Positions 8,539 through 60,760 of a stretch of DNA of 64,000 bases are shown in pieces. Position 1 is the stretch's first letter. Each line of letters starts with the position of its first letter. Source of the stretch: Octopus bimaculoides (taxonomy: Eukaryota); assembly GCF_001194135.2 (NCBI RefSeq), contig NC_068991.1, positions 75,439,445-75,503,444 of the forward strand. Reading direction: 5' to 3'. The translations under genes and the position numbers were made by a program. The notes beneath the pieces are model-generated. The model was not told the origin of the DNA and ran no database searches. It saw nothing but the letters and a program-made list of their open reading frames with translations.

Positions 8539-8839
8539 CGAGGGAGTGCTGAGAACTTCCTGGCTTCGGCTAAAACAAAATACAGGAATATCAGTCAATT
8601 ATGATTTTATTCAACATATTCGCTTCTCAGATTTTCTCTTTTACTTGTTTCAATCATTTGACTGTGGCCATGCTGGAGCACCGCCTTTAGTCGAGCAAAT
8701 TGACCCCACGACTTATTCTTTGTAAGCCGAATACTTATTCTATCGGCCTCTTTTTGCCGAACCGCTAAGTTACGGGGACGTAAACACACGAGCATCGGTT
8801 CTCAAGCGATGGTGGGAGGACAAACACACATACATACAT

Positions 8840-8879
<40 letters not shown>

Positions 8880-9140
8880 GACGGGCTTCTTTCAGTTTCC
8901 GTCTAACAAATTCACACACAAGGCTTTGGTCGGTCTGAGGCTATAGCAGAAGACACTTGCTCAAGGTGCCACGCAGTGGGACTGAACCCGGAACCATGTA
9001 GTTGGTAGGCAAGCTACTTACCACACAGCCACTCCGACTTACCACACAGCCATACACTTATTGCAGCGGTCCTTCAGTTTTTCTAAGCCCACTGAAAGAA
9101 ATCGGAAAGGTGAAGCCAGGAAATTTTCAGCACCTACTCG
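8539..9140. mobile_element. Mariner-type MITE (about 185 bp when empty) with TA target duplication, interrupted by a SINE
   Basis: TA|CGAGGGAGTGCTGAGAA left end and TTTTCAGCACCTACTCG|TA right end. An uninterrupted left part is at 36364-36510. Confidence 0.8.
8633..9035 (-). mobile_element. Full-length tRNA-derived CORE-like SINE, family A
   Basis: Head GGAGTGGCTGTGTGGTAAG..GTTCCGGGTTCAGTCCC, CORE-like CCTTGAGCAAGTGTCTTC, central (TA)n, tail CAGCATGGCCACAGTCAAATGATTGAAACAAGTAAAAGA. Many partial copies in the window. Confidence 0.9.
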
Positions 9141-10844
9141 TAAAAATATGAGACAATCATAGCTGGAACGCCTTTCGCAGTAGAACACTCGTCGAAGCTG
9201 ATATTGGGTCAAACAGTAAGAACAAGACCCACAATATTAAGCGTATGACAGGAGAATTCTATACTTAGGTGTCGGAAAACTTCAGCAGGAATCTATTGAA
9301 TATTACAATGAAACAGTAGAATCTGAGAAAAACGTTGAGAATTTACAAATCGTAGATTACAAAGTAGAATAAATACTTTCGTGCAAAGAGGCACAGTGCC
9401 TTCTCGACTCCATCAGGGGCTGATAGTTCAACGATTAGTGACATTACTGAATGGACAAAAAGCAGCAATCCGTTGAAAGCTGCCCGCAGTCGAAGACTCA
9501 GCAATTCTTTCTTTTTTTTTTTGTGCTTCAATTTCAGACGAAGGCCCTAAGCGTTTGATTATTCAAACCACGCTGTTATTGAACTCAAATGAATTCTTCT
9601 GAAGACGGAGACAGTTTTCAGATTTCGAATTCTATTGTCTCACAAGTCATAAGTCCCTTCTTTCGCTTGCTATGTCCAAACACACACAAATACACCCACC
9701 CACACACACACAAACACACGCATACACATATGAACATATGCATGTGTGTGTGGTGTGTGTTTGGTGGAACGGGCAGTTGTATATACACACATACTTTCAT
9801 GCATATATATATATGCGTAAATGTCGAAATACGTAAATGTCGAAAGCATTGGTGAATAGAACACCGCATCGGTGAATAGAATTTATATATATTTATATTA
9901 TGCATATATCTATATACGTGTATATATATATATATAGTATATATAATATATATATTTATACACATCCACTTTAGTACACTTATGTCTACATGTGATCAGT
10001 TACATGACATGCACACTCCATTTAGTCACACATTCACGCAAACATACACGTGTGTGTGTGTGTATGTGTGCGTGCGCTGTTTGCTTCTGTGTGCGTGTGT
10101 ATTGTTTGTTTTTGCGTGCGTGTGTGCATTTACCTGTACATACAAATGTTCTGTTTATCAGCTATTACGATAGAACAACCTTCAACATGTCACAGACCAG
10201 ATATAGTTATAATTTAAGCAGAAGGTGATTCATTGCGAAATAAATTCAAGGCTATTATCTCGTTACGAGGCAGCTTGAGTGGAGATTTTCTCAGCGTAAC
10301 GAAAATACGAAGAGCTTTCTGATAAAGCCACGTTGATATATACACACGCACACACACATTATATATATATACATATGTATGTATTACGTGTACATGATTG
10401 GCTACGGTTTATCATCTTGTAGTTGTCGTTATCAGATACCTCCTGCCAAGTCTAAGCTAAGCCTAATACCAAAATTTTCTTTATCTTAACGAGAGTAGAG
10501 TTGGTGAAGAACTTTGAAGAAAGTATAAAATAAAGATTGATAATATTATTACGTGTGGTGTGACATGTAATATGAAGGGGAAAAAAGTGTTCGAATCATG
10601 GGCAAAATATTCCACGTACACAAACACTGAGCTGAGCACTCTTGTTTTGGTCATTCAAATGTGAACGAAACATAGGAGTAGCAGTGAGATATACGGCGTA
10701 TTTCGGGCATTTTGAGATCTGGCGGAATCTATCACTCACCAAGCTCTAAGTCTAACTACAGCAAATTTTGTTACTGAAAAAGAAATACAGGCAGAAAGAG
10801 AGGAAAGAAGAACTATTCTCACTAAAGGACTGGTAATTTGTTCA

Positions 10845-10950
10845 TTGCCTCCAAAAGGATGAATGGCAAAATTTACCTCGGCGATGTTTGAACTCGGAAG
10901 GCGAAGAGCCAAAACGATTACCGCAAGGCATTCTAACCGGCGTCTTATCG
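10845..10950 (-). mobile_element. Degenerate SINE family B fragment
   Basis: AAAGGATGAATGGCAAAATTTACCTCGGCGATGTTTGAACTC matches the family B core. Confidence 0.6.
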
Positions 10951-11289
10951 CTAACCTGGTTCATTGACCTGGCATAGAAATCCATGGTATCTATATTTAG
11001 GTGAACAAACCTTCTTTGAAACATATACTGAAACATAACTGTTTTGGTTTCACATTTTATTCTGGGTATTTCATTTCATATTTTTGAATGAATTTCTTAC
11101 AGATTGTTTGAACTATGACCTTCATAAATCCATCTTCTTTGTTTTTAGACTGTGTCGGCCTCATTTTCTGATCCTGGTTGTTACTGCTGCTTTGTCGGTT
11201 GATAACATCGATGTTGCTGGTGTTGATGTTATAACCACATATTGATATTGCATTCGTTGGAATTATTTATATATAAGTTCAAAAAAAGA

Positions 11290-11415
11290 CAAAAAACAAT
11301 AACAAAAAACAACAACGTGAGGACGTGATACGGATAGTGTTATTAGACGCTCGGGAAAGGAAAGAGAGAGAGAGTATGACGTTTCGGGCGGAGCCCTTCG
11401 TCGGAAACAAGGAAG
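11290..11415 (-). mobile_element. Penelope-like terminus with a minimal hammerhead-like motif
   Basis: Minus strand CCGACGA A GGGC TCC GCCC GAAAC GTCA (11404-11377), with a 4-bp stem II. Confidence 0.55.
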
Positions 11416-11811
11416 GTTCAAAGAATGGAAAAACGGAGGAAGAAAAAAAAAATCGGCACCGATGCCCACGAGGTTACATTGTATATATATATATATATAT
11501 ATCGGTATTCAGGGGGGAGTGTTTTTAGTTTAGATTGTGTACAGTTAAAAATCGAATGTTACAAGAAACATATTCTACATGTATAGATATTGAAAATATC
11601 ATATATATATACATACATTCATGTATGCATACATACATGCATGCAAGCACACATAGGCACATACATACATAAACACACACATACATACATGCATGCATGC
11701 ATACATACATACATACACACTCACACAGGTGCGCGCTCATCCACACACAAACAAATTTTAACAGGGAAAGTTGACAGTGACTTCGAAGTTTCAAGTTGCT
11801 CGCCTTCGTGT

Positions 11812-12065
11812 TTCGATTGCGGCCATGCTGGGGCATCGCCTTGAAGTATTTTTAGTCGAAAGAATCGACCGCGCTACTTATTTAGTAAAGCCCGGTATTT
11901 ATTCTATCCGGCATTTTGCCGGATCGGTAAGTTACGGTGACATAAACACACCGACACCGGTCGTCAAGTGTTGATGGGAGACAATCACAAGCACAAACAC
12001 ATACACACACACACACACACATACGACGGGATTCTCTCAGTTATCTTCTACCAAATCCACTCTTA
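11812..12065 (-). mobile_element. SINE family A, 3' portion
   Basis: GCGGCCATGCTGG..AAGTTACGG..ACGACGGG..AAATCCACTC blocks as in the 8633 copy. Confidence 0.75.
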
Positions 12066-12625: not shown

Positions 12626-15249
12626 AAATTCATTGCTTTATTGAATAGTCTGTATATGACTCAATGGTATGATAAAAAAATGTATATTATAATAATGTAT
12701 ATGAATATAATAACAGCTCATAACGTGCCGATACTTAAGAAATAATGTCGAATAGGCAGAAAATTAATCATATTTTTAGAACGTGAGATAGAATGTCAAG
12801 CAGCATTTAGTCCGGTCGTCTGTGCTCTGAGTTCAAATCCCATTGAGATCATCTTCACCCTTCATTCTATCTGGATCGATAATTAGATTATTAGTCTAGT
12901 GCTTGGATCGATTTCTTTTTCTTTCATCCTGTCTTACGATCTTTATATCTAGGAGAATTTGACATGGTGAAACTTAGAAAAGACTAGACTGCGGTAGATT
13001 TTAAATTCCAAGACCTTCCAGATATACGGAAGGCACCTCTAGACTCCGATAAGAGTTGAGGAACCCAAAGTGAGGAAAGATAAATAACTTCCAGCCGTTA
13101 ACCTCGCACCTTTATGTAAACGAGTTACGATTGGTTCGGTCATGTTAGTATTTTCAAAAATAACTCTAGACTCCTTCAACAGATCGGGAAGAAGAAATAA
13201 GTGAATATAGATATATGTATAAACAGCGAAGCTCGTCGTTTCGTTCCTCAATCCAAGATGCTGAGAAAAGAACTGTTGGTCAAACCGCAACACTTAAACG
13301 TGTAACGATATATCTCAGCATACACAGTTGCTTATAACAGAGAGTGCGGTAGTACTTAGTAACTTACGTTTAAATGTTGCTCTTATATCTTTAGTTTCTA
13401 AGAAACCGATCTTGTTCAAGTAAATCCAATGTAAATTTATGCATAAAATGGACTACAAGATGTATCTCTTGGGTTTTGACAATAGTTGAAATGATTTTTG
13501 TTTTTAAAATAATTAGCATACAAAAACAATAAGAGATTAATCAACTATAATATGAACTTGAAATGGCAATAAATGTTTCGACCCCAGCTGGGAATCGGAG
13601 TCTTTTTGCGCTTCCGCTTCATTCTTTTAGTTTTACTGAATTTATGTATTGTTTTGCATAACATATATCTTATTTCGGCGTCCGACGAAGCATCATGGCT
13701 TGCGAGAATTATTCATGTGACAAGGCGTAACTTGGGTTCATTTTATCGAACAAAATATTTTCGATGCTAATCATTACCTTTTCTTTTCCTTTTTTTTTAA
13801 AAATTTTTGATCTTGTTTGCTACAACCACTTGAATACCCAGCGCGTTGATGACAACAGAATGGTGAAATTGTAAATTTAAAATGTCTCTCTATCTGAAAT
13901 GCAACGGTTAATACAATACAAATTATATTCAGTTCAAATACAAATAGTCTTTGAAAGAATTGGAAGGTTATTATGTCTGCCACTATTTTCAGTTCTTTTT
14001 TTAAGTAAATGTTACATTGGGCCGTTTTTAAATGAACGACTCATTAAAATTATCGTTTAATATTTTTTGACCAAAAAGTATTTTAGAAATATTAATTTCA
14101 AATTCGGTATCTCAGTACATATATTGAACAATATTTGTATTTATTTACATGACTTTTCAAGAAGCAATCTTCTTAAACACGATCTTATTTTCATCATGGT
14201 GAATTTGGCCACTTTGAAAGAGATTTGGCTGCTGCTATTTCTAGCAGGATGATAACTTTAGAGAAAGTCTTCACATTTTAAAATCTGTACGAGTATTCGT
14301 ACTATTTTCGGCGGAGGATTATGTCAAAAAACATTATTTTACCATAATTTTCTCCACAATATTACTTAACATGTCTGAAATTGCAATCTATGAGTGAAAC
14401 AGTAAAAATATGCAAGACTTTTCTCAAGTTCCAAATGTGAATTTGTTAACTACAACTCAAAGATAGAGCCTGGTATCTTTGTTGGAAAGCGGCTCCCTCC
14501 TCAGTATAATATTTATAATAATTAAAAAATAGAACACACACACACACACACACACACATCCTATAAACATATATAATGTAAATCACAGAAATATGCTCGA
14601 TACTTCATTTGCAATTATGTATAATTACGTATAATTATCAAGACTACACTTTCGAATTTCAGTTTGTATCTTTGACATATTTTAAATATAGTTATAAAAT
14701 TATTTTTCTGGTGCTGTAATCCTTACCACACAGCCCATCAGTGTAGTTTTCTAGAATATTCCGTTTAGAATTCATCCACTGTTCTATTTAACATACTTAC
14801 AACGACCTCAAATGTGGGGAATAGTAAGTCGATAAAAGGTTTGGTGTACCGACTCGGAGAGATGAAAGGTAAACTTGATTTCGGCAGGATTTTAATTCAA
14901 AACATGGTACCAGCACAAATAAACCAACACCCCGTCGGTTAAAGCCACGAGGGTGTTGTATCGCACGTTCAACGTACGATATAACGGGATAATAACAAGA
15001 TCCTCGCAAATCGTCTGCACAAGACACAGGTAATAACCCTCGACAATGCGCAACTCTCGGCTTTACATAGCTCCAAGGACTCCCTTCTTTATTCGGCACT
15101 ACGGCCGTAACATAGAGGGGGACACTACAGGGATAGACAACACAAAACGTGGGGTATATAAAATGAATGATGAAATACGAGATGAAATATTTCACAATGA
15201 AAAGATGTAATGGCTTATGAGCCCCGCAGAGCTCATTATACATTAATTA

Positions 15250-16379
15250 TCAGTCTTTTTTGTCTGTTATGTATTCCATGAGGTTCTCTAGTTCCATTAC
15301 ATTGGATAAACTTTCATATTGTATATATATCCCGGTAGGTCTAATTCTGGTTCCGAATAACTCCATCAGTCTTTCCTTTCTCTCTTCCTCCAATAAAACC
15401 GCTCCTTCGTCGGGTTCGAACATCTCATCATTCAGTTTGACTCGTATTAGATTTTTCATTTTTGCTAGTTTTTTTTTCTATCTCTACATCCTTATTGTAT
15501 CCTAACACTGTTCTTCTATTTCGTCCAGCAATTTGTCTTGTTTGTGCTACATATTCCTCTCTCCTCCTCACTCTCTCCCTCTACTCATCATACTTCTTCT
15601 CTCTCGCTCTTTCCTCTTCAGTTTTCTTCCTCCTGCTTGTTGTTGGCTCTGGTTCCTGCGTTCGAATCTCCACACTCTTTTTCCATAGTAACTTGTTTCT
15701 TTGTCTCCGCGTTTCTTTTCTTTGGACTTTTTGGCGGAGACGCAACTCTCGTTCTTTTCCAATCTGTCGCAGATTCCTCCTCCTTTTCCTTCCCCGCTTC
15801 TACCACCATTGCTTCTACTACGTCCATCTTCCCCTGTTTCTGGGGACATCTTGCATGCATGTGTCCCCTTTCTCTGCAGTTATAGCATATTGGCGGTCTC
15901 CCCTCCACCACGACTTTCAGTCGGGTCGCATCGGGGAGCACCAACTCCTCAGCCATCTTATGTAGACCTGGCAGGGTTATGCGTATAAACGCTTCGAGAC
16001 TATAACTCCGGCTGATCTCCTTCGACCTCTCCGCCTCTATTATATCCACCTCCTCCTCGAAGTTGCAGATGTTGGCCGCCACCAGCCATGCTTCATCAAT
16101 CTCTGGGGACACCCTCGTTGATCTCGAAGGCCTCGTGGCGTGCCCCCTGCCTCTCCCTCGTTAACGAAGCGCACCTCCACCGTGCCGCATTTCCCTCCTC
16201 TCGAGCAAAATGTTGAAACTTCTCCAATCTCTTGCAAACACTTCTCAACTTCTTCGACCTCCGCCTCCTCAATCTTCTTCGCTTCCATGTTAAATGTTCG
16301 GTATACCACTCTTTCTCCCTCTGCCCCCCTGCAACACGTCGGCTAGTGGTGTCAAGCGGAGGCAATCTCCCTAGTCCAT
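15250..16379 (-). pseudogene. L1/Tx1-type ORF1 gag-like nucleic-acid-binding protein (about 375 aa reconstructed, disrupted)
   Basis: Track ORFs 16040-16309, 15618-16112 and 15250-15459 join through frameshifts: RRM-like GTVEVRFVNE, then LKVVVEGRPPI-CYNCRERGHMHARC (CX2CX4HX4C knuckle), and a charged C-terminus. ATG at 16379 is followed by a stop at codon 3. Confidence 0.75.
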
Positions 16380-16415
16380 TATACCCCTTAAAATCTTTTC
16401 CCTCCGTCTCAATTT

Positions 16416-16915
16416 GCCCCAGCTGCAAAATGTTGGGCGCCGGGCCCCAGCTGCAAAATGTTGGGCGCCGGGCCCCAGCTGCAAAATGTTGGGCGCCGGG
16501 CCCCAGCTGCAAAANNNNNNNNNNNNNNNNNNNNNNNNNNNNNNNNNNNNNNNNNNNNNNNNNNNNNNNNNNNNNNNNNNNNNNNNNNNNNNNNNNNNNN
16601 NNNNNNNNNNNNNNNNNNNNNNNNNNNNNNNNNNNNNNNNNNNNNNNNNNNNNNNNNNNNNNNNNNNNNNNNNNNNNNNNNNNNNNNNNNNNNNNNNNNN
16701 NNNNNNNNNNNNNNNNNNNNNNNNNNNNNNNNNNNNNNNNNNNNNNNNNNNNNNNNNNNNNNNNNNNNNNNNNNNNNNNNNNNNNNNNNNNNNNNNNNNN
16801 NNNNNNNNNNNNNNNNNNNTTGGGCGCCGGGCCCCAGCTGCAAAATGTTGGGCGCCGGGCCCCAGCTGCAAAATGTTGGGCGCCGGGCCCCAGCTGCAAA
16901 ATGTTGGGCGCCGGG
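16416..16915. repeat. GC-rich 28-bp tandem repeat (GCCCCAGCTGCAAAATGTTGGGCGCCGG)n spanning an N gap
   Basis: Exact 28-bp period (AGCTGCAAAA at 16421, 16449, 16477) with identical units on both sides of the gap 16515-16819. Confidence 0.95.
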
Positions 16916-17285
16916 CAACCGCTCGCCACCGCTGCACAGCTGCCGGCTCCCATTACCAACAGTGGGCAGAAAAAACAAACTCAACAACAGTTCAATCAAC
17001 AAATCCAACGACAATATCAACAATTTCAAAATCAATTTTCACAACTCACCACTCTGAAGACTAACACACGACTCCCAGGCTCCAATGACTGATTTCTTTA
17101 CTCGGTACCTATACTCTCTGCGCATGTCCATTTATATTGTGGAACCGTCCACTAGGAACCAACCAATAGGGGTGTTCTATTTCCACGCAACAGAGGGTTT
17201 CTGTTTAAACGATCCCTGGAATAGCCTGCACGTGAAATTAACGTGCAAGTGACTGAGCATTCCACACGTACCCGTTACATAGTGT

Positions 17286-18135
17286 GTGTGTAATTCGACT
17301 GCGTCTGCAAAGAAGTGTGCCGTCTGGCATTATCGTAATGAAAGGCAATGTCCTTACCATTAATAAGTACTGGTCGGTTCTGGTGGATCGCTGCGCTTAA
17401 TTTGTCTAGCTGGTTACAATACACTTCCGAGTTAATGGTCCTGTCTGTGAGAAAAAGCTTGTGAAAGACATCCTTACAATCTCATCAAAATAAAAGCATA
17501 ATCTTCTTCGCGTAAAGCCCTGCTTTGGAGGTTGTTAGTGATGATTCACCGCACTTCCTCCATCACCGTTAGCGCGTCACATTGCTGTAGACGGTCCATT
17601 TTTCGCTCCCTATCACTGTTCTATTAAAAAAGGATTCTTTTCTTCACGTTTCTGCTACGAATCGCAGATGGAAATCATTTGGATGAGGATAGCCTCATTC
17701 AAATGAGGTGGGGCCCTGCTGACGTAAGCAAATTGATGTAGATGGTTTTCAACAATCGATTTGAATAATGGGAGAATATCTACGATCATCCAGGTTGGAG
17801 TTGGTGTTGACTAGCTCTTTAATTTTGTCGCTGGTAATCTCAATCAACCAATGAGTGGTGCATCTTGAACGGAAAAATTTCTCGATCAAAATCTGGAGAA
17901 TCACTTCCGACACAGAGGTTCCATAACAGTCTCCTTTTCGTACAGAACACATATCTTCCTGCAGATTTCCGGCGGTTTCTGTCCGTTTTTTAAATAGAAG
18001 AAAATGTGAGGTATCGATAAAGTTCGTTTCGGCTCTCCATTTTCAGAGCTATCTCAAGCACATAAATTTCATCAAAATACGCAAATTCGCGTCAAACCAT
18101 GTTGAAGTGTCAAATATCTCACGAATGTACCATGG
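17286..18135 (-). mobile_element. Mariner transposase remnant, 3'-truncated at the composite retroelement
   Basis: ATG at 18040. IGSEKWTVYSNV..KKIML..TINSEVYCNQLDKL..RPVL..FHYDNARRHTSLQT corresponds to the GDEKW and HHDNARPH motifs. No YSPDLAP part follows. Confidence 0.85.
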
Positions 18136-19058: not shown

Positions 19059-19260
19059 TTTATTTCTACTCTAGGCACATGGCCTAAATTTTTTTGGGAA
19101 GGGACCAGTCGATCAGATCGACCACAGTACGCAACTGGTACTTAATTTTAATCGATCACGAAAGGATAAAAGCCAAATTCGACCTCAGCGAAATTTGAAC
19201 TCAGAGCGTAACGACAGACGAAATACCGCTAAGCATTCCGCCCGGCGTGCTAACGTTTCT
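19059..19260 (-). mobile_element. SINE family B, tail B1, lacking about 15 nt of head
   Basis: B core plus GGCCATGTGCCTAGAGTAGAAATA tail. Confidence 0.85.
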
Positions 19261-19483
19261 TATTTCTTTATTGCCCAGAAGGGGCTAAACATAGAGGGGA
19301 CAAACAAAGAGATTAAGTCGATTATATCGACGCCAGTGCGTAACTAGTACCTATTTAATCGACCCCGAAAGGATGAAAGGTAATGTCAACCTCGGCGGAA
19401 TTTGAACTCAGAACGTAACGATAGACGAAACACCGCTAAGCATTTCGCCCGGCGTGCTAACGTTTCTGTCAGCTCGCCGCCTT
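19261..19483 (-). mobile_element. SINE family B, tail B2, full length
   Basis: Intact head and TGTCCCCCTCTATGTTTAGCCCCTTCTGGGCAATAAAGAAATA tail. Confidence 0.9.
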
Positions 19484-60039: not shown

Positions 60040-60760
60040 TACTTTCAAGTACACTGGATGACCCGTTGATGCCACTGGTTTCGGTTTAACTGCGGTTTTT
60101 CTATGAATCTGGTTTTGTGATATTGACCTTTCTTATTTCTTTATTGCCCACAAGGGGCAATAAAGGGGACAAACATAGAGGGGACAAACAAGGACAGACA
60201 GGGATTAAGTCGATTACATCTACCCCAGTACGTAACTGGTACTTAATTTATCGACCCCGAAAGGATGAAAGGCAAAGTCGACCTCGGTGGAATTTGAACT
60301 TACAACATAACGGCAGACGAAATACCGCTAACCATTTCGCCCGGCGTGCTGACGTTTTCGCCAACTCACCGCCTTTGATATTGACCTTTCTCCCTTCGGT
60401 TATAAATGTTCTGCGCCATGAACTTTTCGGTTTTATTCTCTCTTTTCGATACAGCGGTGTCAATTTGAAAGCTGTTTTAGAATGGCGTCCTTCTGGTAGC
60501 CGAGTGATGCAGCCTGCTAATTTTAATCTTCGTTCCGTTATGATTTCGCTAAGTGGTCTTGTATTATCAGTCTTTAGAATATGTCCATTGATTATATAGT
60601 CTTGCCAGTTTGTTCTCAGAATCTTTCTCAAGCATCTGTATCAGATATACTTAATTTTCTGTCGATTTCACGGTGCTTTTGCACGTCTCACTGGCGTAGA
60701 GACCTATCGACATCTTTAACCTTTGGCACACTGTAGGCACATCATGTCACCGTATGAGTT
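60040..60760 (-). mobile_element. RTE-clade LINE 3' end, interrupted by a SINE
   Basis: GLYASET..RKILRTNWQDYIIN..ITERRLKLAG..RLPEGR..WRRTFITE, continuing beyond the SINE with QWHQRV. Confidence 0.75.
60134..60375 (-). mobile_element. SINE family B, tail B2, full length, with a 16-bp TSD
   Basis: TGATATTGACCTTTCT at 60118-60133 and 60376-60391. Confidence 0.95.

What the first reader, a model, noticed from the sequence alone, without database searches (positions are those of the whole stretch)
15085..16379. ORF1-only (half-LINE-like) retroelement in a probable octopus genome
Seen: an L1/Tx1-type ORF1 (RRM-like region plus CX2CX4HX4C) reconstructs to about 375 aa and stops at 15250. A stem-loop plus AATAAAGAA terminus follows only about 160 nt later, leaving no room for ORF2. 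Established: HAL1 elements are L1-derived and encode only ORF1p. Inference: an independently derived non-autonomous family that makes its own RNA chaperone and borrows RT/endonuclease in trans. I know of no description in cephalopods but cannot search. This copy is disrupted (at least 3 lesions).
Basis: partly seen in the sequence, partly recalled or inferred. Interest (0 to 1): 0.8.

Follow-up and report, generated by a model that had tools for sequence, protein, structure and literature searches.

The report
ORF1-only LINE derivative in octopus
This is a decayed copy of an octopus jumping gene that keeps only the RNA-binding first gene of an L1-type LINE plus that LINE's 3' recognition tail; other Octopus loci show the same layout, so it looks like a family that borrows the copying enzyme from full-length relatives, as HAL1 does in mammals.

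Summary
On the minus strand a broken ORF with a CX2CX4HX4C knuckle ends at TGA-TAA (15252-15247). A hairpin plus AATAAAGAA (15107-15085) lies 165 nt downstream, and no EN/RT homology exists anywhere in the window. The element is larger than reported. The ORF starts at ATG 16953, a 28-nt tandem array sits inside its N-terminus, and there are at least six lesions.

Homologues occur only in Octopus bimaculoides, O. sinensis and O. vulgaris. In two O. sinensis loci the same ORF1 family is followed by an L1-like ORF2 (APE endonuclease, RT, zf-RVT) and the same tail, so autonomous relatives exist. Five other units (L001, L004, L005 unit 1, L006, L007) go straight from ORF1 to a short 3'UTR and the tail. 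The window's whole 3'UTR aligns with that of L004, so this is not a local deletion. One ORF1-only copy has a long flanking direct repeat (a target-site duplication is the favoured reading, not the only one), and two have intact ORFs. ORF1-only units fall in three well-supported ORF1 clades.

Verdict: a real, family-level, HAL1/HeT-A-like ORF1-only non-autonomous LINE derivative. Mobilisation in trans, copy number and selection were not tested. It is a new member of a known kind, of moderate interest.

The parts
17079..17108 (-). Upstream copy of a candidate target-site duplication, or a tail-like target (GTACCGAGTAAAGAAATCAGTCATTGGAGC)
   Evidence: It matches 15099-15070 at 23 of 30 positions. 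Local alignment score is 30 against a shuffle mean of 18.9, and 1 of 500 shuffles reach it. Similarity stops exactly where the 5'UTR begins.
16954..17078 (-). 5'UTR (GT-rich). The 5' end is inferred from the candidate TSD
   Evidence: A ~40-nt stretch (17045-17005) aligns with the 5'UTR of the L003 element just upstream of its ATG, z=7.3. Sequence read.
15250..16953 (-). Disrupted ORF1. It starts at ATG 16953 and ends at TGA 15252-15250. At least six lesions (array expansion, several frameshifts, a ~19-aa deletion, in-frame stops)
   Evidence: Three-frame translation. Full-length alignment to Octopus ORF1 homologues. tblastn pieces in three frames. N-terminus compared with L003 and L004.
16416..16916 (-). 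28-nt tandem repeat array (unit GCCCCAGCTGCAAAATGTTGGGCGCCGG) inside the N-terminal coding region. It contains assembly gap 16515-16819
   Evidence: TRF finds 3.5 perfect copies on each side of the gap. Gap coordinates. The array lies downstream of the homologous start codon.
15900..16201 (-). Alpha/beta (ferredoxin-/RRM-like) domain region, RGGKCGTVEVRF...KVVVEGR. It has a ~19-aa deletion and two frame changes near 16150-16110
   Evidence: Alignment A1. The equivalent region of P0040 folds with pLDDT ~86. Foldseek matches are only generic.
15846..15887 (-). CCHC zinc knuckle CYNCRERGHMHARC
   Evidence: Read directly. Pfam zf-CCHC E 9e-4. C, C, H and C are nearly invariant in alignment A1.
15512..15845 (-). 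Lys/Glu-rich linker with the SPPKSPKK motif. Frame change near 15620 and an in-frame stop near 15583
   Evidence: Predicted disordered in P0040.
15253..15511 (-). Conserved C-terminal domain (TVLGYNKDVEIEKK...MKNLIRVKL...LMEYITDKKD). Frame change near 15470
   Evidence: It aligns to the C-termini of P0005, P0012, P0014 and P0040. The equivalent domain in P0040 has pLDDT ~90.
15085..15249 (-). 3'UTR: hairpin GAGCTCTGCGGGGCTC (about 15234-15219), a TCAT-rich stretch, then the terminal tail
   Evidence: It aligns end to end with the L004 3'UTR (10942-11104), 68.5% identity, z=17. The same module is seen in L001, L007, L005 unit 1 and in full LINEs L002 and L005.
15085..15125 (-). Terminal tail GTGTCCCCCTCTATGTT-A-CGGC-CGTAGT-GCCG-AATAAAGAA (hairpin 15107-15094, AATAAAGAA 15093-15085)
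   Evidence: The same tail ends SINE-like repeats in the window (19264-19304, 33544-33584, 60137-60186), full LINEs, and other ORF1-only elements. A 4-6 bp hairpin sits at the same place in 15 of 16 tails, with differing stem sequences; the sixteenth (L007) was mis-trimmed in that run but carries the hairpin AGGC-CUUGU-GCCU by eye.
15070..15084 (-). Downstream copy of the candidate target-site duplication (GGGAGTCCTTGGAGC)
   Evidence: Similarity to 17093-17079 ends at ...TTGGAGC on both sides.

Best explanation
The locus (about 17078 to 15085, minus strand) is an old, decayed insertion of a non-autonomous retrotransposon. It derives from the L1-type (L1-Tx1-like) LINEs of octopods by loss of ORF2. 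A unit consists of a 5'UTR, one ORF1 and a 125-500-nt 3'UTR. ORF1 encodes an alpha/beta domain, a CCHC knuckle, a Lys/Glu-rich linker and a conserved C-terminal domain. The last ~110-150 nt of the 3'UTR (a TCAT-rich stretch, GTCCCCTCTATGTT, a short hairpin, AATAAAGAA) are shared with full-length LINEs and with an abundant SINE. Shown: the ORF1 is homologous to the ORF1 of ORF2-bearing LINEs. ORF2 is absent here and in five other units from two species. The 3'UTR and tail are homologous across ORF1-only and autonomous elements. Inferred, by analogy with L1 ORF1p, HAL1, HeT-A and tail-sharing SINE/LINE pairs: the element is transcribed, its ORF1 protein coats its own RNA, and the ORF2 protein (endonuclease plus RT) of an autonomous relative recognises the shared 3' module. 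That protein then inserts the RNA by target-primed reverse transcription. This particular copy is dead.
For: (1) The family is a true LINE ORF1. In L002 the homologue (9965-11812) is followed about 40 nt later by ORF2, which starts MANLRIGCLNVRGL. In L005, units 2-4 have ORF1 plus ORF2 with Exo_endo_phos, RVT_1 and zf-RVT. The best PDB match of that ORF2 is human L1 ORF2p, E 9e-40. (2) There is no ORF2 in the window, nor after ORF1 in L001, L004, L005 unit 1, L006 or L007 (tblastn). Stop-to-tail distances are 165 nt in the window, about 250 in L004, about 290 in L001 (plus a SINE insertion), 125 in L005 unit 1 and about 500 in L007. (3) The window's 3'UTR aligns with L004's over its full length. 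L001, L003 and L004 share the sequence directly after the stop codon. (4) The same tail and hairpin occur in full LINEs, ORF1-only units and SINEs. (5) Signs of retrotransposition: a 213-nt direct repeat flanks L004 and starts exactly at the 3' terminus. That terminus is independently defined by a ~70-nt 5'-truncated copy with a 17-nt TSD. The window has a candidate 30-nt duplication. (6) An ORF1 tree puts the window with L001, L003, L004 and six O. bimaculoides proteins in one clade (98% bootstrap), with core identities of 42-56%. No member of that clade with readable context has ORF2. (7) Intact ORFs of 463 aa (L005 unit 1) and 379 aa (L007) occur in ORF1-only units.
Against: Only about 210 kb of octopus DNA could be examined. 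No second copy of the window's own subfamily (more than 80% identical) was found, so its copy number is unknown. All four clade-B copies seen as DNA are broken. dN/dS could not be measured because the copies are too diverged. Unsampled clade-B members could still carry ORF2. L003 is uninformative because of a 2.1-kb assembly gap after ORF1. The window's candidate TSD is imperfect (23 of 30). Mobilisation in trans and RNA binding are inferences.
Confidence: 0.7

Rival explanations
1. Recurrent dead-on-arrival products. ORF2-deleted RNAs or copies are produced repeatedly from autonomous LINE masters, for example by aberrant splicing, template switching or internal deletion. They insert once, and there is no self-sustaining ORF1-only lineage.
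For: ORF1-only units occur in three separate ORF1 clades. L005 unit 1 groups (92% bootstrap) with ORF2-bearing L005 units, so ORF2 has been lost more than once. All clade-B copies seen as DNA are broken.
Against: Clade B (98% bootstrap) has 42-56% core identity among members. Yet those members share the same layout, 3'UTR and post-stop sequence, and none seen carries ORF2. That pattern fits diversification after a single loss better than four identical independent deletions. Intact 463- and 379-aa ORFs exist in ORF1-only units.
Confidence: 0.18
2. A one-off deletion at this locus. A full-length LINE inserted here and later lost ORF2 through a genomic deletion.
For: The copy is old and heavily damaged, including a ~19-aa deletion and a 3'UTR about 80 nt shorter than that of L004.
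Against: The whole interval between stop and tail is homologous to the 3'UTR of other ORF1-only elements. No EN/RT remnant exists in the window. L001, L004, L005 unit 1, L006 and L007 have the same layout.
Confidence: 0.04
3. A retrocopy or pseudogene of a host gene. The CCHC protein would be a cellular or domesticated gene (as L1TD1 is for L1) and this locus a processed pseudogene.
For: Databases list the homologues as ordinary 'uncharacterized' or 'CCHC-type domain-containing' octopus proteins.
Against: The same ORF sits directly upstream of EN/RT ORF2 in L002 and L005. Copies end in the LINE/SINE tail rather than poly(A). The gene models are fragments that splice around frameshifts and SINE insertions. 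There are many diverged, broken copies.
Confidence: 0.03

Closest known systems
HAL1 (half-L1) elements of mammals
   Same: L1-superfamily derivatives that keep ORF1 and the 3' end but lack ORF2. They are presumed to be mobilised by ORF2p of autonomous relatives. ORF2 loss is thought to have happened more than once (own knowledge: Bao & Jurka 2010; HAL1 is referred to in PMC4161310 and PMC5753468).
   Different: HAL1 derives from mammalian L1, whose ORF1p is of the coiled-coil/RRM/CTD (Transposase_22) type, and it ends in poly(A). The octopus ORF1 has a CCHC knuckle and gives no Transposase_22 hit. It ends in a specific hairpin + AATAAAGAA tail shared with its LINE and SINEs. The origin is independent, in a mollusc.
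HeT-A and other ORF1-only telomeric retrotransposons of Drosophila (Jockey clade)
   Same: Gag/ORF1-only non-LTR elements with CCHC knuckles that depend on the RT of related elements. ORF2 was lost repeatedly, and some ORF1-only lineages gave rise to new ORF1-only lineages (bioRxiv 10.1101/2025.06.09.658640). Head-to-tail arrays mixing ORF1-only and full units resemble L005.
   Different: A different LINE clade: the octopus relatives have L1-like ORF2 with zf-RVT. There is no evidence of telomeric location or host function. L005 lies about 71 Mb into a 110-Mb chromosome.
L1-Tx1 LINE families annotated in Octopus genomes
   Same: The autonomous relatives found here (L002, L005) have APE endonuclease + RT + zf-RVT and an upstream CCHC-type ORF1. 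They are probably what repeat annotations of O. vulgaris and other coleoids call L1-Tx1. O. vulgaris is reported to have 13 recently active families (PMC13282606; PMC8967140).
   Different: The window element lacks ORF2. The papers read do not mention ORF1-only members. Assignment of L002 and L005 to the Tx1 subgroup was not tested against reference Tx1 sequences.
SINEs that share the 3' tail of a partner LINE (stringent recognition, e.g. UnaSINE1/UnaL2, ZfL2; PMC4176376)
   Same: Non-autonomous elements that carry the partner LINE's 3' stem-loop tail. An octopus SINE of ~230-250 nt with this very tail is present in the window and other loci.
   Different: SINEs are non-coding, Pol III-type units. 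This element is ~2 kb and encodes its own ORF1 protein.

Membership tests
ORF1-only non-autonomous LINE derivative (HAL1/HeT-A-type architecture) | Encodes a protein homologous to the ORF1 of an autonomous LINE | tested here: met
   The window ORF aligns over its full length with the Octopus ORF1 family. The same family precedes EN/RT ORF2 in L002 and L005.
ORF1-only non-autonomous LINE derivative (HAL1/HeT-A-type architecture) | No ORF2 (endonuclease/RT) between ORF1 and the 3' terminus | tested here: met
   There are 165 nt between stop and terminus, all homologous to a 3'UTR. tblastn with ORF2 finds nothing in the window at E=10.
ORF1-only non-autonomous LINE derivative (HAL1/HeT-A-type architecture) | The architecture is shared by independent copies (a family, not a local deletion) | tested here: met
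   L001, L004, L005 unit 1, L006 and L007 have ORF1, then a 3'UTR, then the tail, without ORF2. The window and L004 3'UTRs are homologous. The copy number of the window's own subfamily was not measured.
ORF1-only non-autonomous LINE derivative (HAL1/HeT-A-type architecture) | 3' end shared with an autonomous partner LINE | tested here: met
   The tail and hairpin are conserved in L002 and L005 units 2-4 as well as in the ORF1-only units.
ORF1-only non-autonomous LINE derivative (HAL1/HeT-A-type architecture) | Target-site duplications on full-length ORF1-only copies | tested here: inconclusive
   L004 has a 213-nt flanking direct repeat starting exactly at the terminus, but a homologous palindrome also precedes L006, so a 5'UTR origin is not excluded. 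The window has only a candidate 23/30 duplication.
ORF1-only non-autonomous LINE derivative (HAL1/HeT-A-type architecture) | ORF1 kept functional (intact masters, dN/dS below 1) | tested here: inconclusive
   Intact ORFs of 463 aa (L005 unit 1) and 379 aa (L007) exist in other clades. All four clade-B copies seen as DNA are broken. The copies are too diverged for dN/dS.
ORF1-only non-autonomous LINE derivative (HAL1/HeT-A-type architecture) | Mobilised in trans by a partner's ORF2 protein | not testable with these tools
   This needs a retrotransposition assay or polymorphic young insertions.
HAL1 proper (mammalian L1-derived) | ORF1p of the mammalian L1 type (Transposase_22: coiled coil, RRM, CTD) and a poly(A) tail | tested here: not met
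   Pfam finds only zf-CCHC and no Transposase_22. The terminus is hairpin + AATAAAGAA, not poly(A). The host is an octopus.
L1 superfamily LINE (autonomous relatives L002/L005) | ORF2 with an APE-type endonuclease, RT and C-terminal zf-RVT; RT closest to L1 ORF2p | tested here: met
   Exo_endo_phos 3.6e-15, RVT_1 2.3e-31, zf-RVT 2e-8. Human L1 ORF2p scores 9e-40 against 3e-24 for R2.
Tx1 subgroup of L1 | RT groups with reference Tx1 elements in a phylogeny | not tested
   No reference Tx1 sequences were available. The database names of ORF2 homologues were uninformative. The literature labels octopus families L1-Tx1.
Type I LINE ORF1 (RRM + CCHC) | CCHC knuckle C-terminal to an RRM fold | tested here: inconclusive
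   The CCHC is present. The upstream domain is a confident alpha/beta fold (pLDDT ~86), but Foldseek gives only generic ferredoxin-like hits with E above 5e-3 and no L1 ORF1p RRM.
HeT-A/TART-type telomeric retrotransposons | Jockey-clade origin and telomere-specific head-to-tail arrays | tested here: not met
   The relatives' ORF2 is L1-like. The head-to-tail array in L005 is chromosome-internal. The window copy is solitary.

The most novel reading that the evidence does not exclude
Octopods harbour long-lived, diversified lineages of ORF1-only L1-type retrotransposons. At least three ORF1 clades, spread over O. bimaculoides, O. sinensis and O. vulgaris, would have propagated for tens of millions of years as protein-coding parasites of autonomous L1-Tx1 LINEs. 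They would insert next to existing tails to build mixed head-to-tail arrays. That would be a mollusc counterpart of the Drosophila HeT-A/TART relationship, outside telomeres.
Probability: 0.3. Interest if true: 0.6.

Novelty: new member of a known kind. Interest (0 to 1): 0.5.

Why it matters
Protein-coding non-autonomous LINEs are documented in few systems, chiefly HAL1 in mammals and HeT-A-like elements in flies. An independent case in a cephalopod, with a CCHC-type ORF1 and a specific RT-recognition tail, would show that keeping ORF1 and borrowing ORF2 is a recurrent strategy. It would also give a natural system for asking what ORF1 contributes in cis when RT acts in trans. On the practical side, dozens of octopus 'genes' in UniProt and RefSeq (CCHC-type domain-containing or uncharacterized proteins) are fragments of these elements. 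Octopus LINE expression studies should therefore separate ORF1-only transcripts from autonomous ones.

Tried and rejected
- A word-indexed protein search with a 222-aa reconstruction found nothing. Only the exhaustive HMMER search recovered the family.
- A self-BLAST of the window found no second copy.
- The look-up of encoding contigs failed for UniProt-only proteins P0040, P0005 and P0029, and for the window's own 69- and 164-aa ORFs. Closely related copies of the window's subfamily could therefore not be retrieved.
tblastn with an octopus ORF2 was used instead.
- A sequence search against PDB returned only generic knuckles. Foldseek against PDB returned only generic ferredoxin-like folds, so the RRM claim stays open.
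- Rfam and ARAGORN found nothing in the window.
- L003 could not be scored for ORF2 because of a 2126-nt N gap right after ORF1.
- A formal covariation count of the tail hairpin was abandoned. The 5' arm is shifted by one base in the window copy relative to the consensus, so the columns do not pair in register. Each tail was folded separately instead.
- The reading of the 28-nt array as promoter monomers was rejected, because the array lies downstream of the homologous start codon.
- The database names of ORF2 homologues gave no clade label.
- dN/dS was not attempted. The closest pairs with DNA are only 42-56% identical in protein.
Full report
**What is in the window**

Everything lies on the minus strand. 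Three-frame translation and the ORF list show a reading frame broken into pieces. It contains the knuckle ICYNCRERGHMHARC (15887-15846), a Lys/Glu-rich stretch with SPPKSPKK, and a terminal segment MKNLIRVKL...LMEYITDKKD that ends at TGA TAA (15252-15247).

Pfam sees only a borderline zf-CCHC. After the stop come 165 nt that end in ...GTCCCCCTCTATGTT-A-CGGC-CGTAGT-GCCG-AATAAAGAA (15125-15085).

**The protein family**

A word-indexed search found nothing. An exhaustive HMMER search with the 164-aa ORF gave 104 hits. The real relatives (P0002, P0004, P0005, P0012, P0014, P0017, P0029, P0040 and others) share one order of parts: an N-terminal alpha/beta region (RG.K.GTVEVRF...), the knuckle, a K/E linker and a ~90-aa C-terminal domain. 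Several end exactly where the window ORF ends.

All named members come from Octopus bimaculoides, O. sinensis or O. vulgaris, which supports an octopus origin. AlphaFold on P0040 with the family alignment gives two confident domains (residues 40-140 and 295-386, pLDDT 86-90) joined by disorder. Foldseek returns only generic ferredoxin-like folds. 'RRM-like' is therefore plausible but not shown.

**True extent and damage**

Comparison with the L003 and L004 copies shows that the ORF begins at ATG 16953. MGAGSCAAVAS aligns with METQPAISYAAATG and MEKAPVGGLSYAATTG, at both protein and DNA level. The perfect 28-nt tandem array at 16416-16916, interrupted by an assembly gap, therefore lies inside the N-terminal coding region and is not a promoter.

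Lesions, from 5' to 3':
- the 28-nt array expansion;
- two frame changes and stops between about 16400 and 16300;
- a ~19-aa deletion with two frame changes near 16150-16110;
- a frame change near 15620;
- an in-frame stop near 15583;
- a frame change near 15470.

A 30-nt stretch at 17108-17079 resembles 15099-15070 (23 of 30 positions; 1 of 500 shuffles reach the score). The similarity ends exactly at the proposed 5' end and just past the tail. This is a candidate target-site duplication whose first half looks like the tail itself. That places the element at about 17078-15085.

**Is it a LINE ORF1?**

Yes. In locus L002 (O. sinensis) the homologue (9965-11812) is followed after ~40 nt by an ORF2 that starts MANLRIGCLNVRGL. 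That ORF2 has an endonuclease, an RT (YADD) and a CPKC...H...C C-terminal domain, and stops at 15113.

In L005 (O. sinensis), three consecutive units each have ORF1 plus a near-intact ORF2. Pfam finds Exo_endo_phos, RVT_1 and zf-RVT, and the best solved relative is human L1 ORF2p (E 9e-40). Octopus repeat annotations list L1-Tx1 families (PMC13282606, PMC8967140). I did not test the Tx1 assignment directly.

**Is the missing ORF2 local or a family trait?**

tblastn with octopus ORF2 finds nothing in the window. It also finds nothing downstream of ORF1 in L001 or L004 (O. sinensis), L005 unit 1, or L006 or L007 (O. vulgaris). In each of these, ORF1 is followed by a short 3'UTR and the same tail:

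| Unit | Stop-to-tail distance | Notes |
|---|---|---|
| Window | 165 nt | decayed ORF |
| L004 | ~250 nt | broken ORF |
| L001 | ~290 nt | plus a SINE insertion |
| L005 unit 1 | 125 nt | intact 463-aa ORF |
| L007 | ~500 nt | intact 379-aa ORF |
| L006 | not measured | degenerate end |

The window's whole 3'UTR aligns with that of L004 (15250-15085 against 10942-11104; 68.5% identity; z=17). L001, L003 and L004 also share the sequence immediately after the stop. L003 is uninformative because of a 2.1-kb gap.

**The tail**

The motif CTCTATGTT-N(8-22)-AATAAAGAA occurs three times in the window against 0 expected. Sixteen tails were aligned, from ORF1-only units, full LINEs and a ~230-250-nt SINE present several times in the window and other loci. 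They share GTCCCCTCT.TGTT, a 4-6-bp hairpin with a 5-6-nt loop, and AATAAAGAA.

Stem sequences differ between copies while the hairpin persists: CGGC/GCCG here, GCCC/GGGC in most, and GGGC/GCUC, GAGC/GCUC and AGGC/GCCU elsewhere. Each hairpin alone is too short to be significant. The argument rests on conservation of position with changing stems.

The ~100 nt upstream (a TCAT-rich stretch, TTTCATTGTAA) is also shared with the full LINEs. Taken together, the tail and the stretch upstream of it match what is expected of a 3' module recognised by the partner's reverse transcriptase, as in tail-sharing SINE/LINE pairs (PMC4176376).

**Evidence of transposition as an ORF1-only unit**

L004 is flanked by a 213-nt direct repeat (8910-9122 and 11117-11325; 92.5% identity). 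The repeat begins exactly after ...AATAAAGAATAAAGCTAGCAAAGAC. The same terminus is defined independently by a ~70-nt 5'-truncated copy nearby, which has a 17-nt TSD.

There is a caveat. The repeat belongs to a palindromic sequence that also lies just upstream of the L006 element. It could therefore be a preferred target or part of a 5'UTR. This is unresolved.

**Phylogeny**

A neighbour-joining tree of the core (alpha/beta domain plus knuckle) gives three groupings:
- The window, L001, L003, L004 and six O. bimaculoides proteins form one clade (98% bootstrap; 42-56% identity).
- L006, L007 and P0045 form a second clade (100% bootstrap).
- L005 unit 1 groups with the ORF2-bearing L005 units and P0040 (92% bootstrap).

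ORF2 loss therefore happened more than once. Within the window's clade, the shared layout and 3'UTR argue for diversification after the loss.

**Mechanism and rivals**

- Best explanation (0.7): a HAL1/HeT-A-like non-autonomous element that encodes its own ORF1 protein. It is inserted by the ORF2 protein of autonomous octopus L1-type LINEs through the shared 3' module. This copy is long dead.
- Main rival (0.18): ORF2-less copies are repeatedly generated dead-on-arrival products without their own lineage.
- Local deletion (0.04): contradicted by the shared junction.
- Host-gene retrocopy (0.03): contradicted by the ORF2 linkage and the LINE tail.

**Comparison and novelty**

ORF1-only LINE derivatives are known: HAL1 in mammals and HeT-A-type elements in Drosophila. 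In Drosophila, repeated ORF2 loss and ORF1-only lineages that spawn new ones have been described (bioRxiv 10.1101/2025.06.09.658640).

The octopus element works the same way but is not a member of either family. It has a different ORF1 type, a specific tail instead of poly(A), an L1-like rather than Jockey-like partner, and a mollusc host. I found no cephalopod description in the searchable literature. Repbase and Dfam could not be checked. I rate it a new member of a known kind, with interest 0.5.

**Limits**

- Only about 210 kb of octopus DNA was available.
- The copy number and age of the window's own subfamily are untested.
- Selection on ORF1 is untested.
- Mobilisation in trans is untested.

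Noticed in passing
window 19253-19483 (-), 60126-60375 (-), 33541-33592 (+, tail only); also L001 465-693 and 10446-10674, L005 417-649: A ~230-250-nt SINE-like repeat ends in the same ~50-nt tail (GTCCCCTCTATGTT, hairpin, AATAAAGAAATAAG) as the ORF1-only element and the full LINEs. One copy sits inside the ORF1 of the L001 element. ARAGORN and Rfam recognise no tRNA-like head in the window copies.
   Followed up: partly
L005 1-20850 (O. sinensis CM016867.1, about 70.97 Mb): A head-to-tail array of at least five units, each ending in the tail. Unit 1 is ORF1-only with an intact 463-aa ORF. Units 2-4 are full ORF1+ORF2 LINEs of differing subfamilies, and unit 5 begins at the locus end. Units 3 and 4 start with ACTGAATACTCGTCAT directly after the previous tail. 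This could reflect insertion at existing tails or old tandem duplication.
   Followed up: partly
L004 8763-9175 and 11117-11325; L006 9315-9887: A palindromic repeat (arms 8763-8900 and 9039-9175) lies directly upstream of the ORF1-only element in L004, and a homologous one lies upstream of the element in L006 (another species and another ORF1 clade). In L004 its right part is duplicated (213 nt, 92.5%) immediately after the element's tail. It may be a long TSD in a preferred target or part of a 5'UTR; this is unresolved.
   Followed up: partly
window 16416-16916 (-): A perfect 28-nt tandem array (3.5 copies visible on each side of an assembly gap) has expanded inside the N-terminal coding region of the element. 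The unit length is not a multiple of three.
   Followed up: yes
window 17275-17424 (-): A fragment of a mariner-type transposase (...DIAFHYDNARRHTS...) lies just upstream of the element.
   Followed up: no
L001 10001-11007; L002 10001-16928; L003 10001-10657; L004 10001-10616; L006; L007: Annotated octopus 'genes' are fragments of these retroelement ORF1s. Examples are XP_036360159.1, XP_036364761.1, XP_014783152.1, XP_036367384.1, CAI9718385.1, CAI9737598.1 and many UniProt A0A0L8... entries. Some models splice around frameshifts or SINE insertions. A0A0L8FRC8 (P0027) fuses an RGS-like region to an ORF1 fragment.
   Followed up: partly
L002 13308-13487 vs 13920-14092: The ORF2 of the L002 LINE carries an internal inverted duplication of part of the RT region as well as frameshifts, so this 'autonomous' copy is itself dead.
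   Followed up: no
L004 11973-12039: A ~70-nt, severely 5'-truncated copy of the same tail (96% identical to the tail of the neighbouring ORF1-only element) is flanked by a 17-nt TSD, ACTTGAACTTGCACCAA. It defines the exact 3' terminus ...AATAAAGAATAAAGCTAGCAAAGAC for that subfamily.
   Followed up: yes
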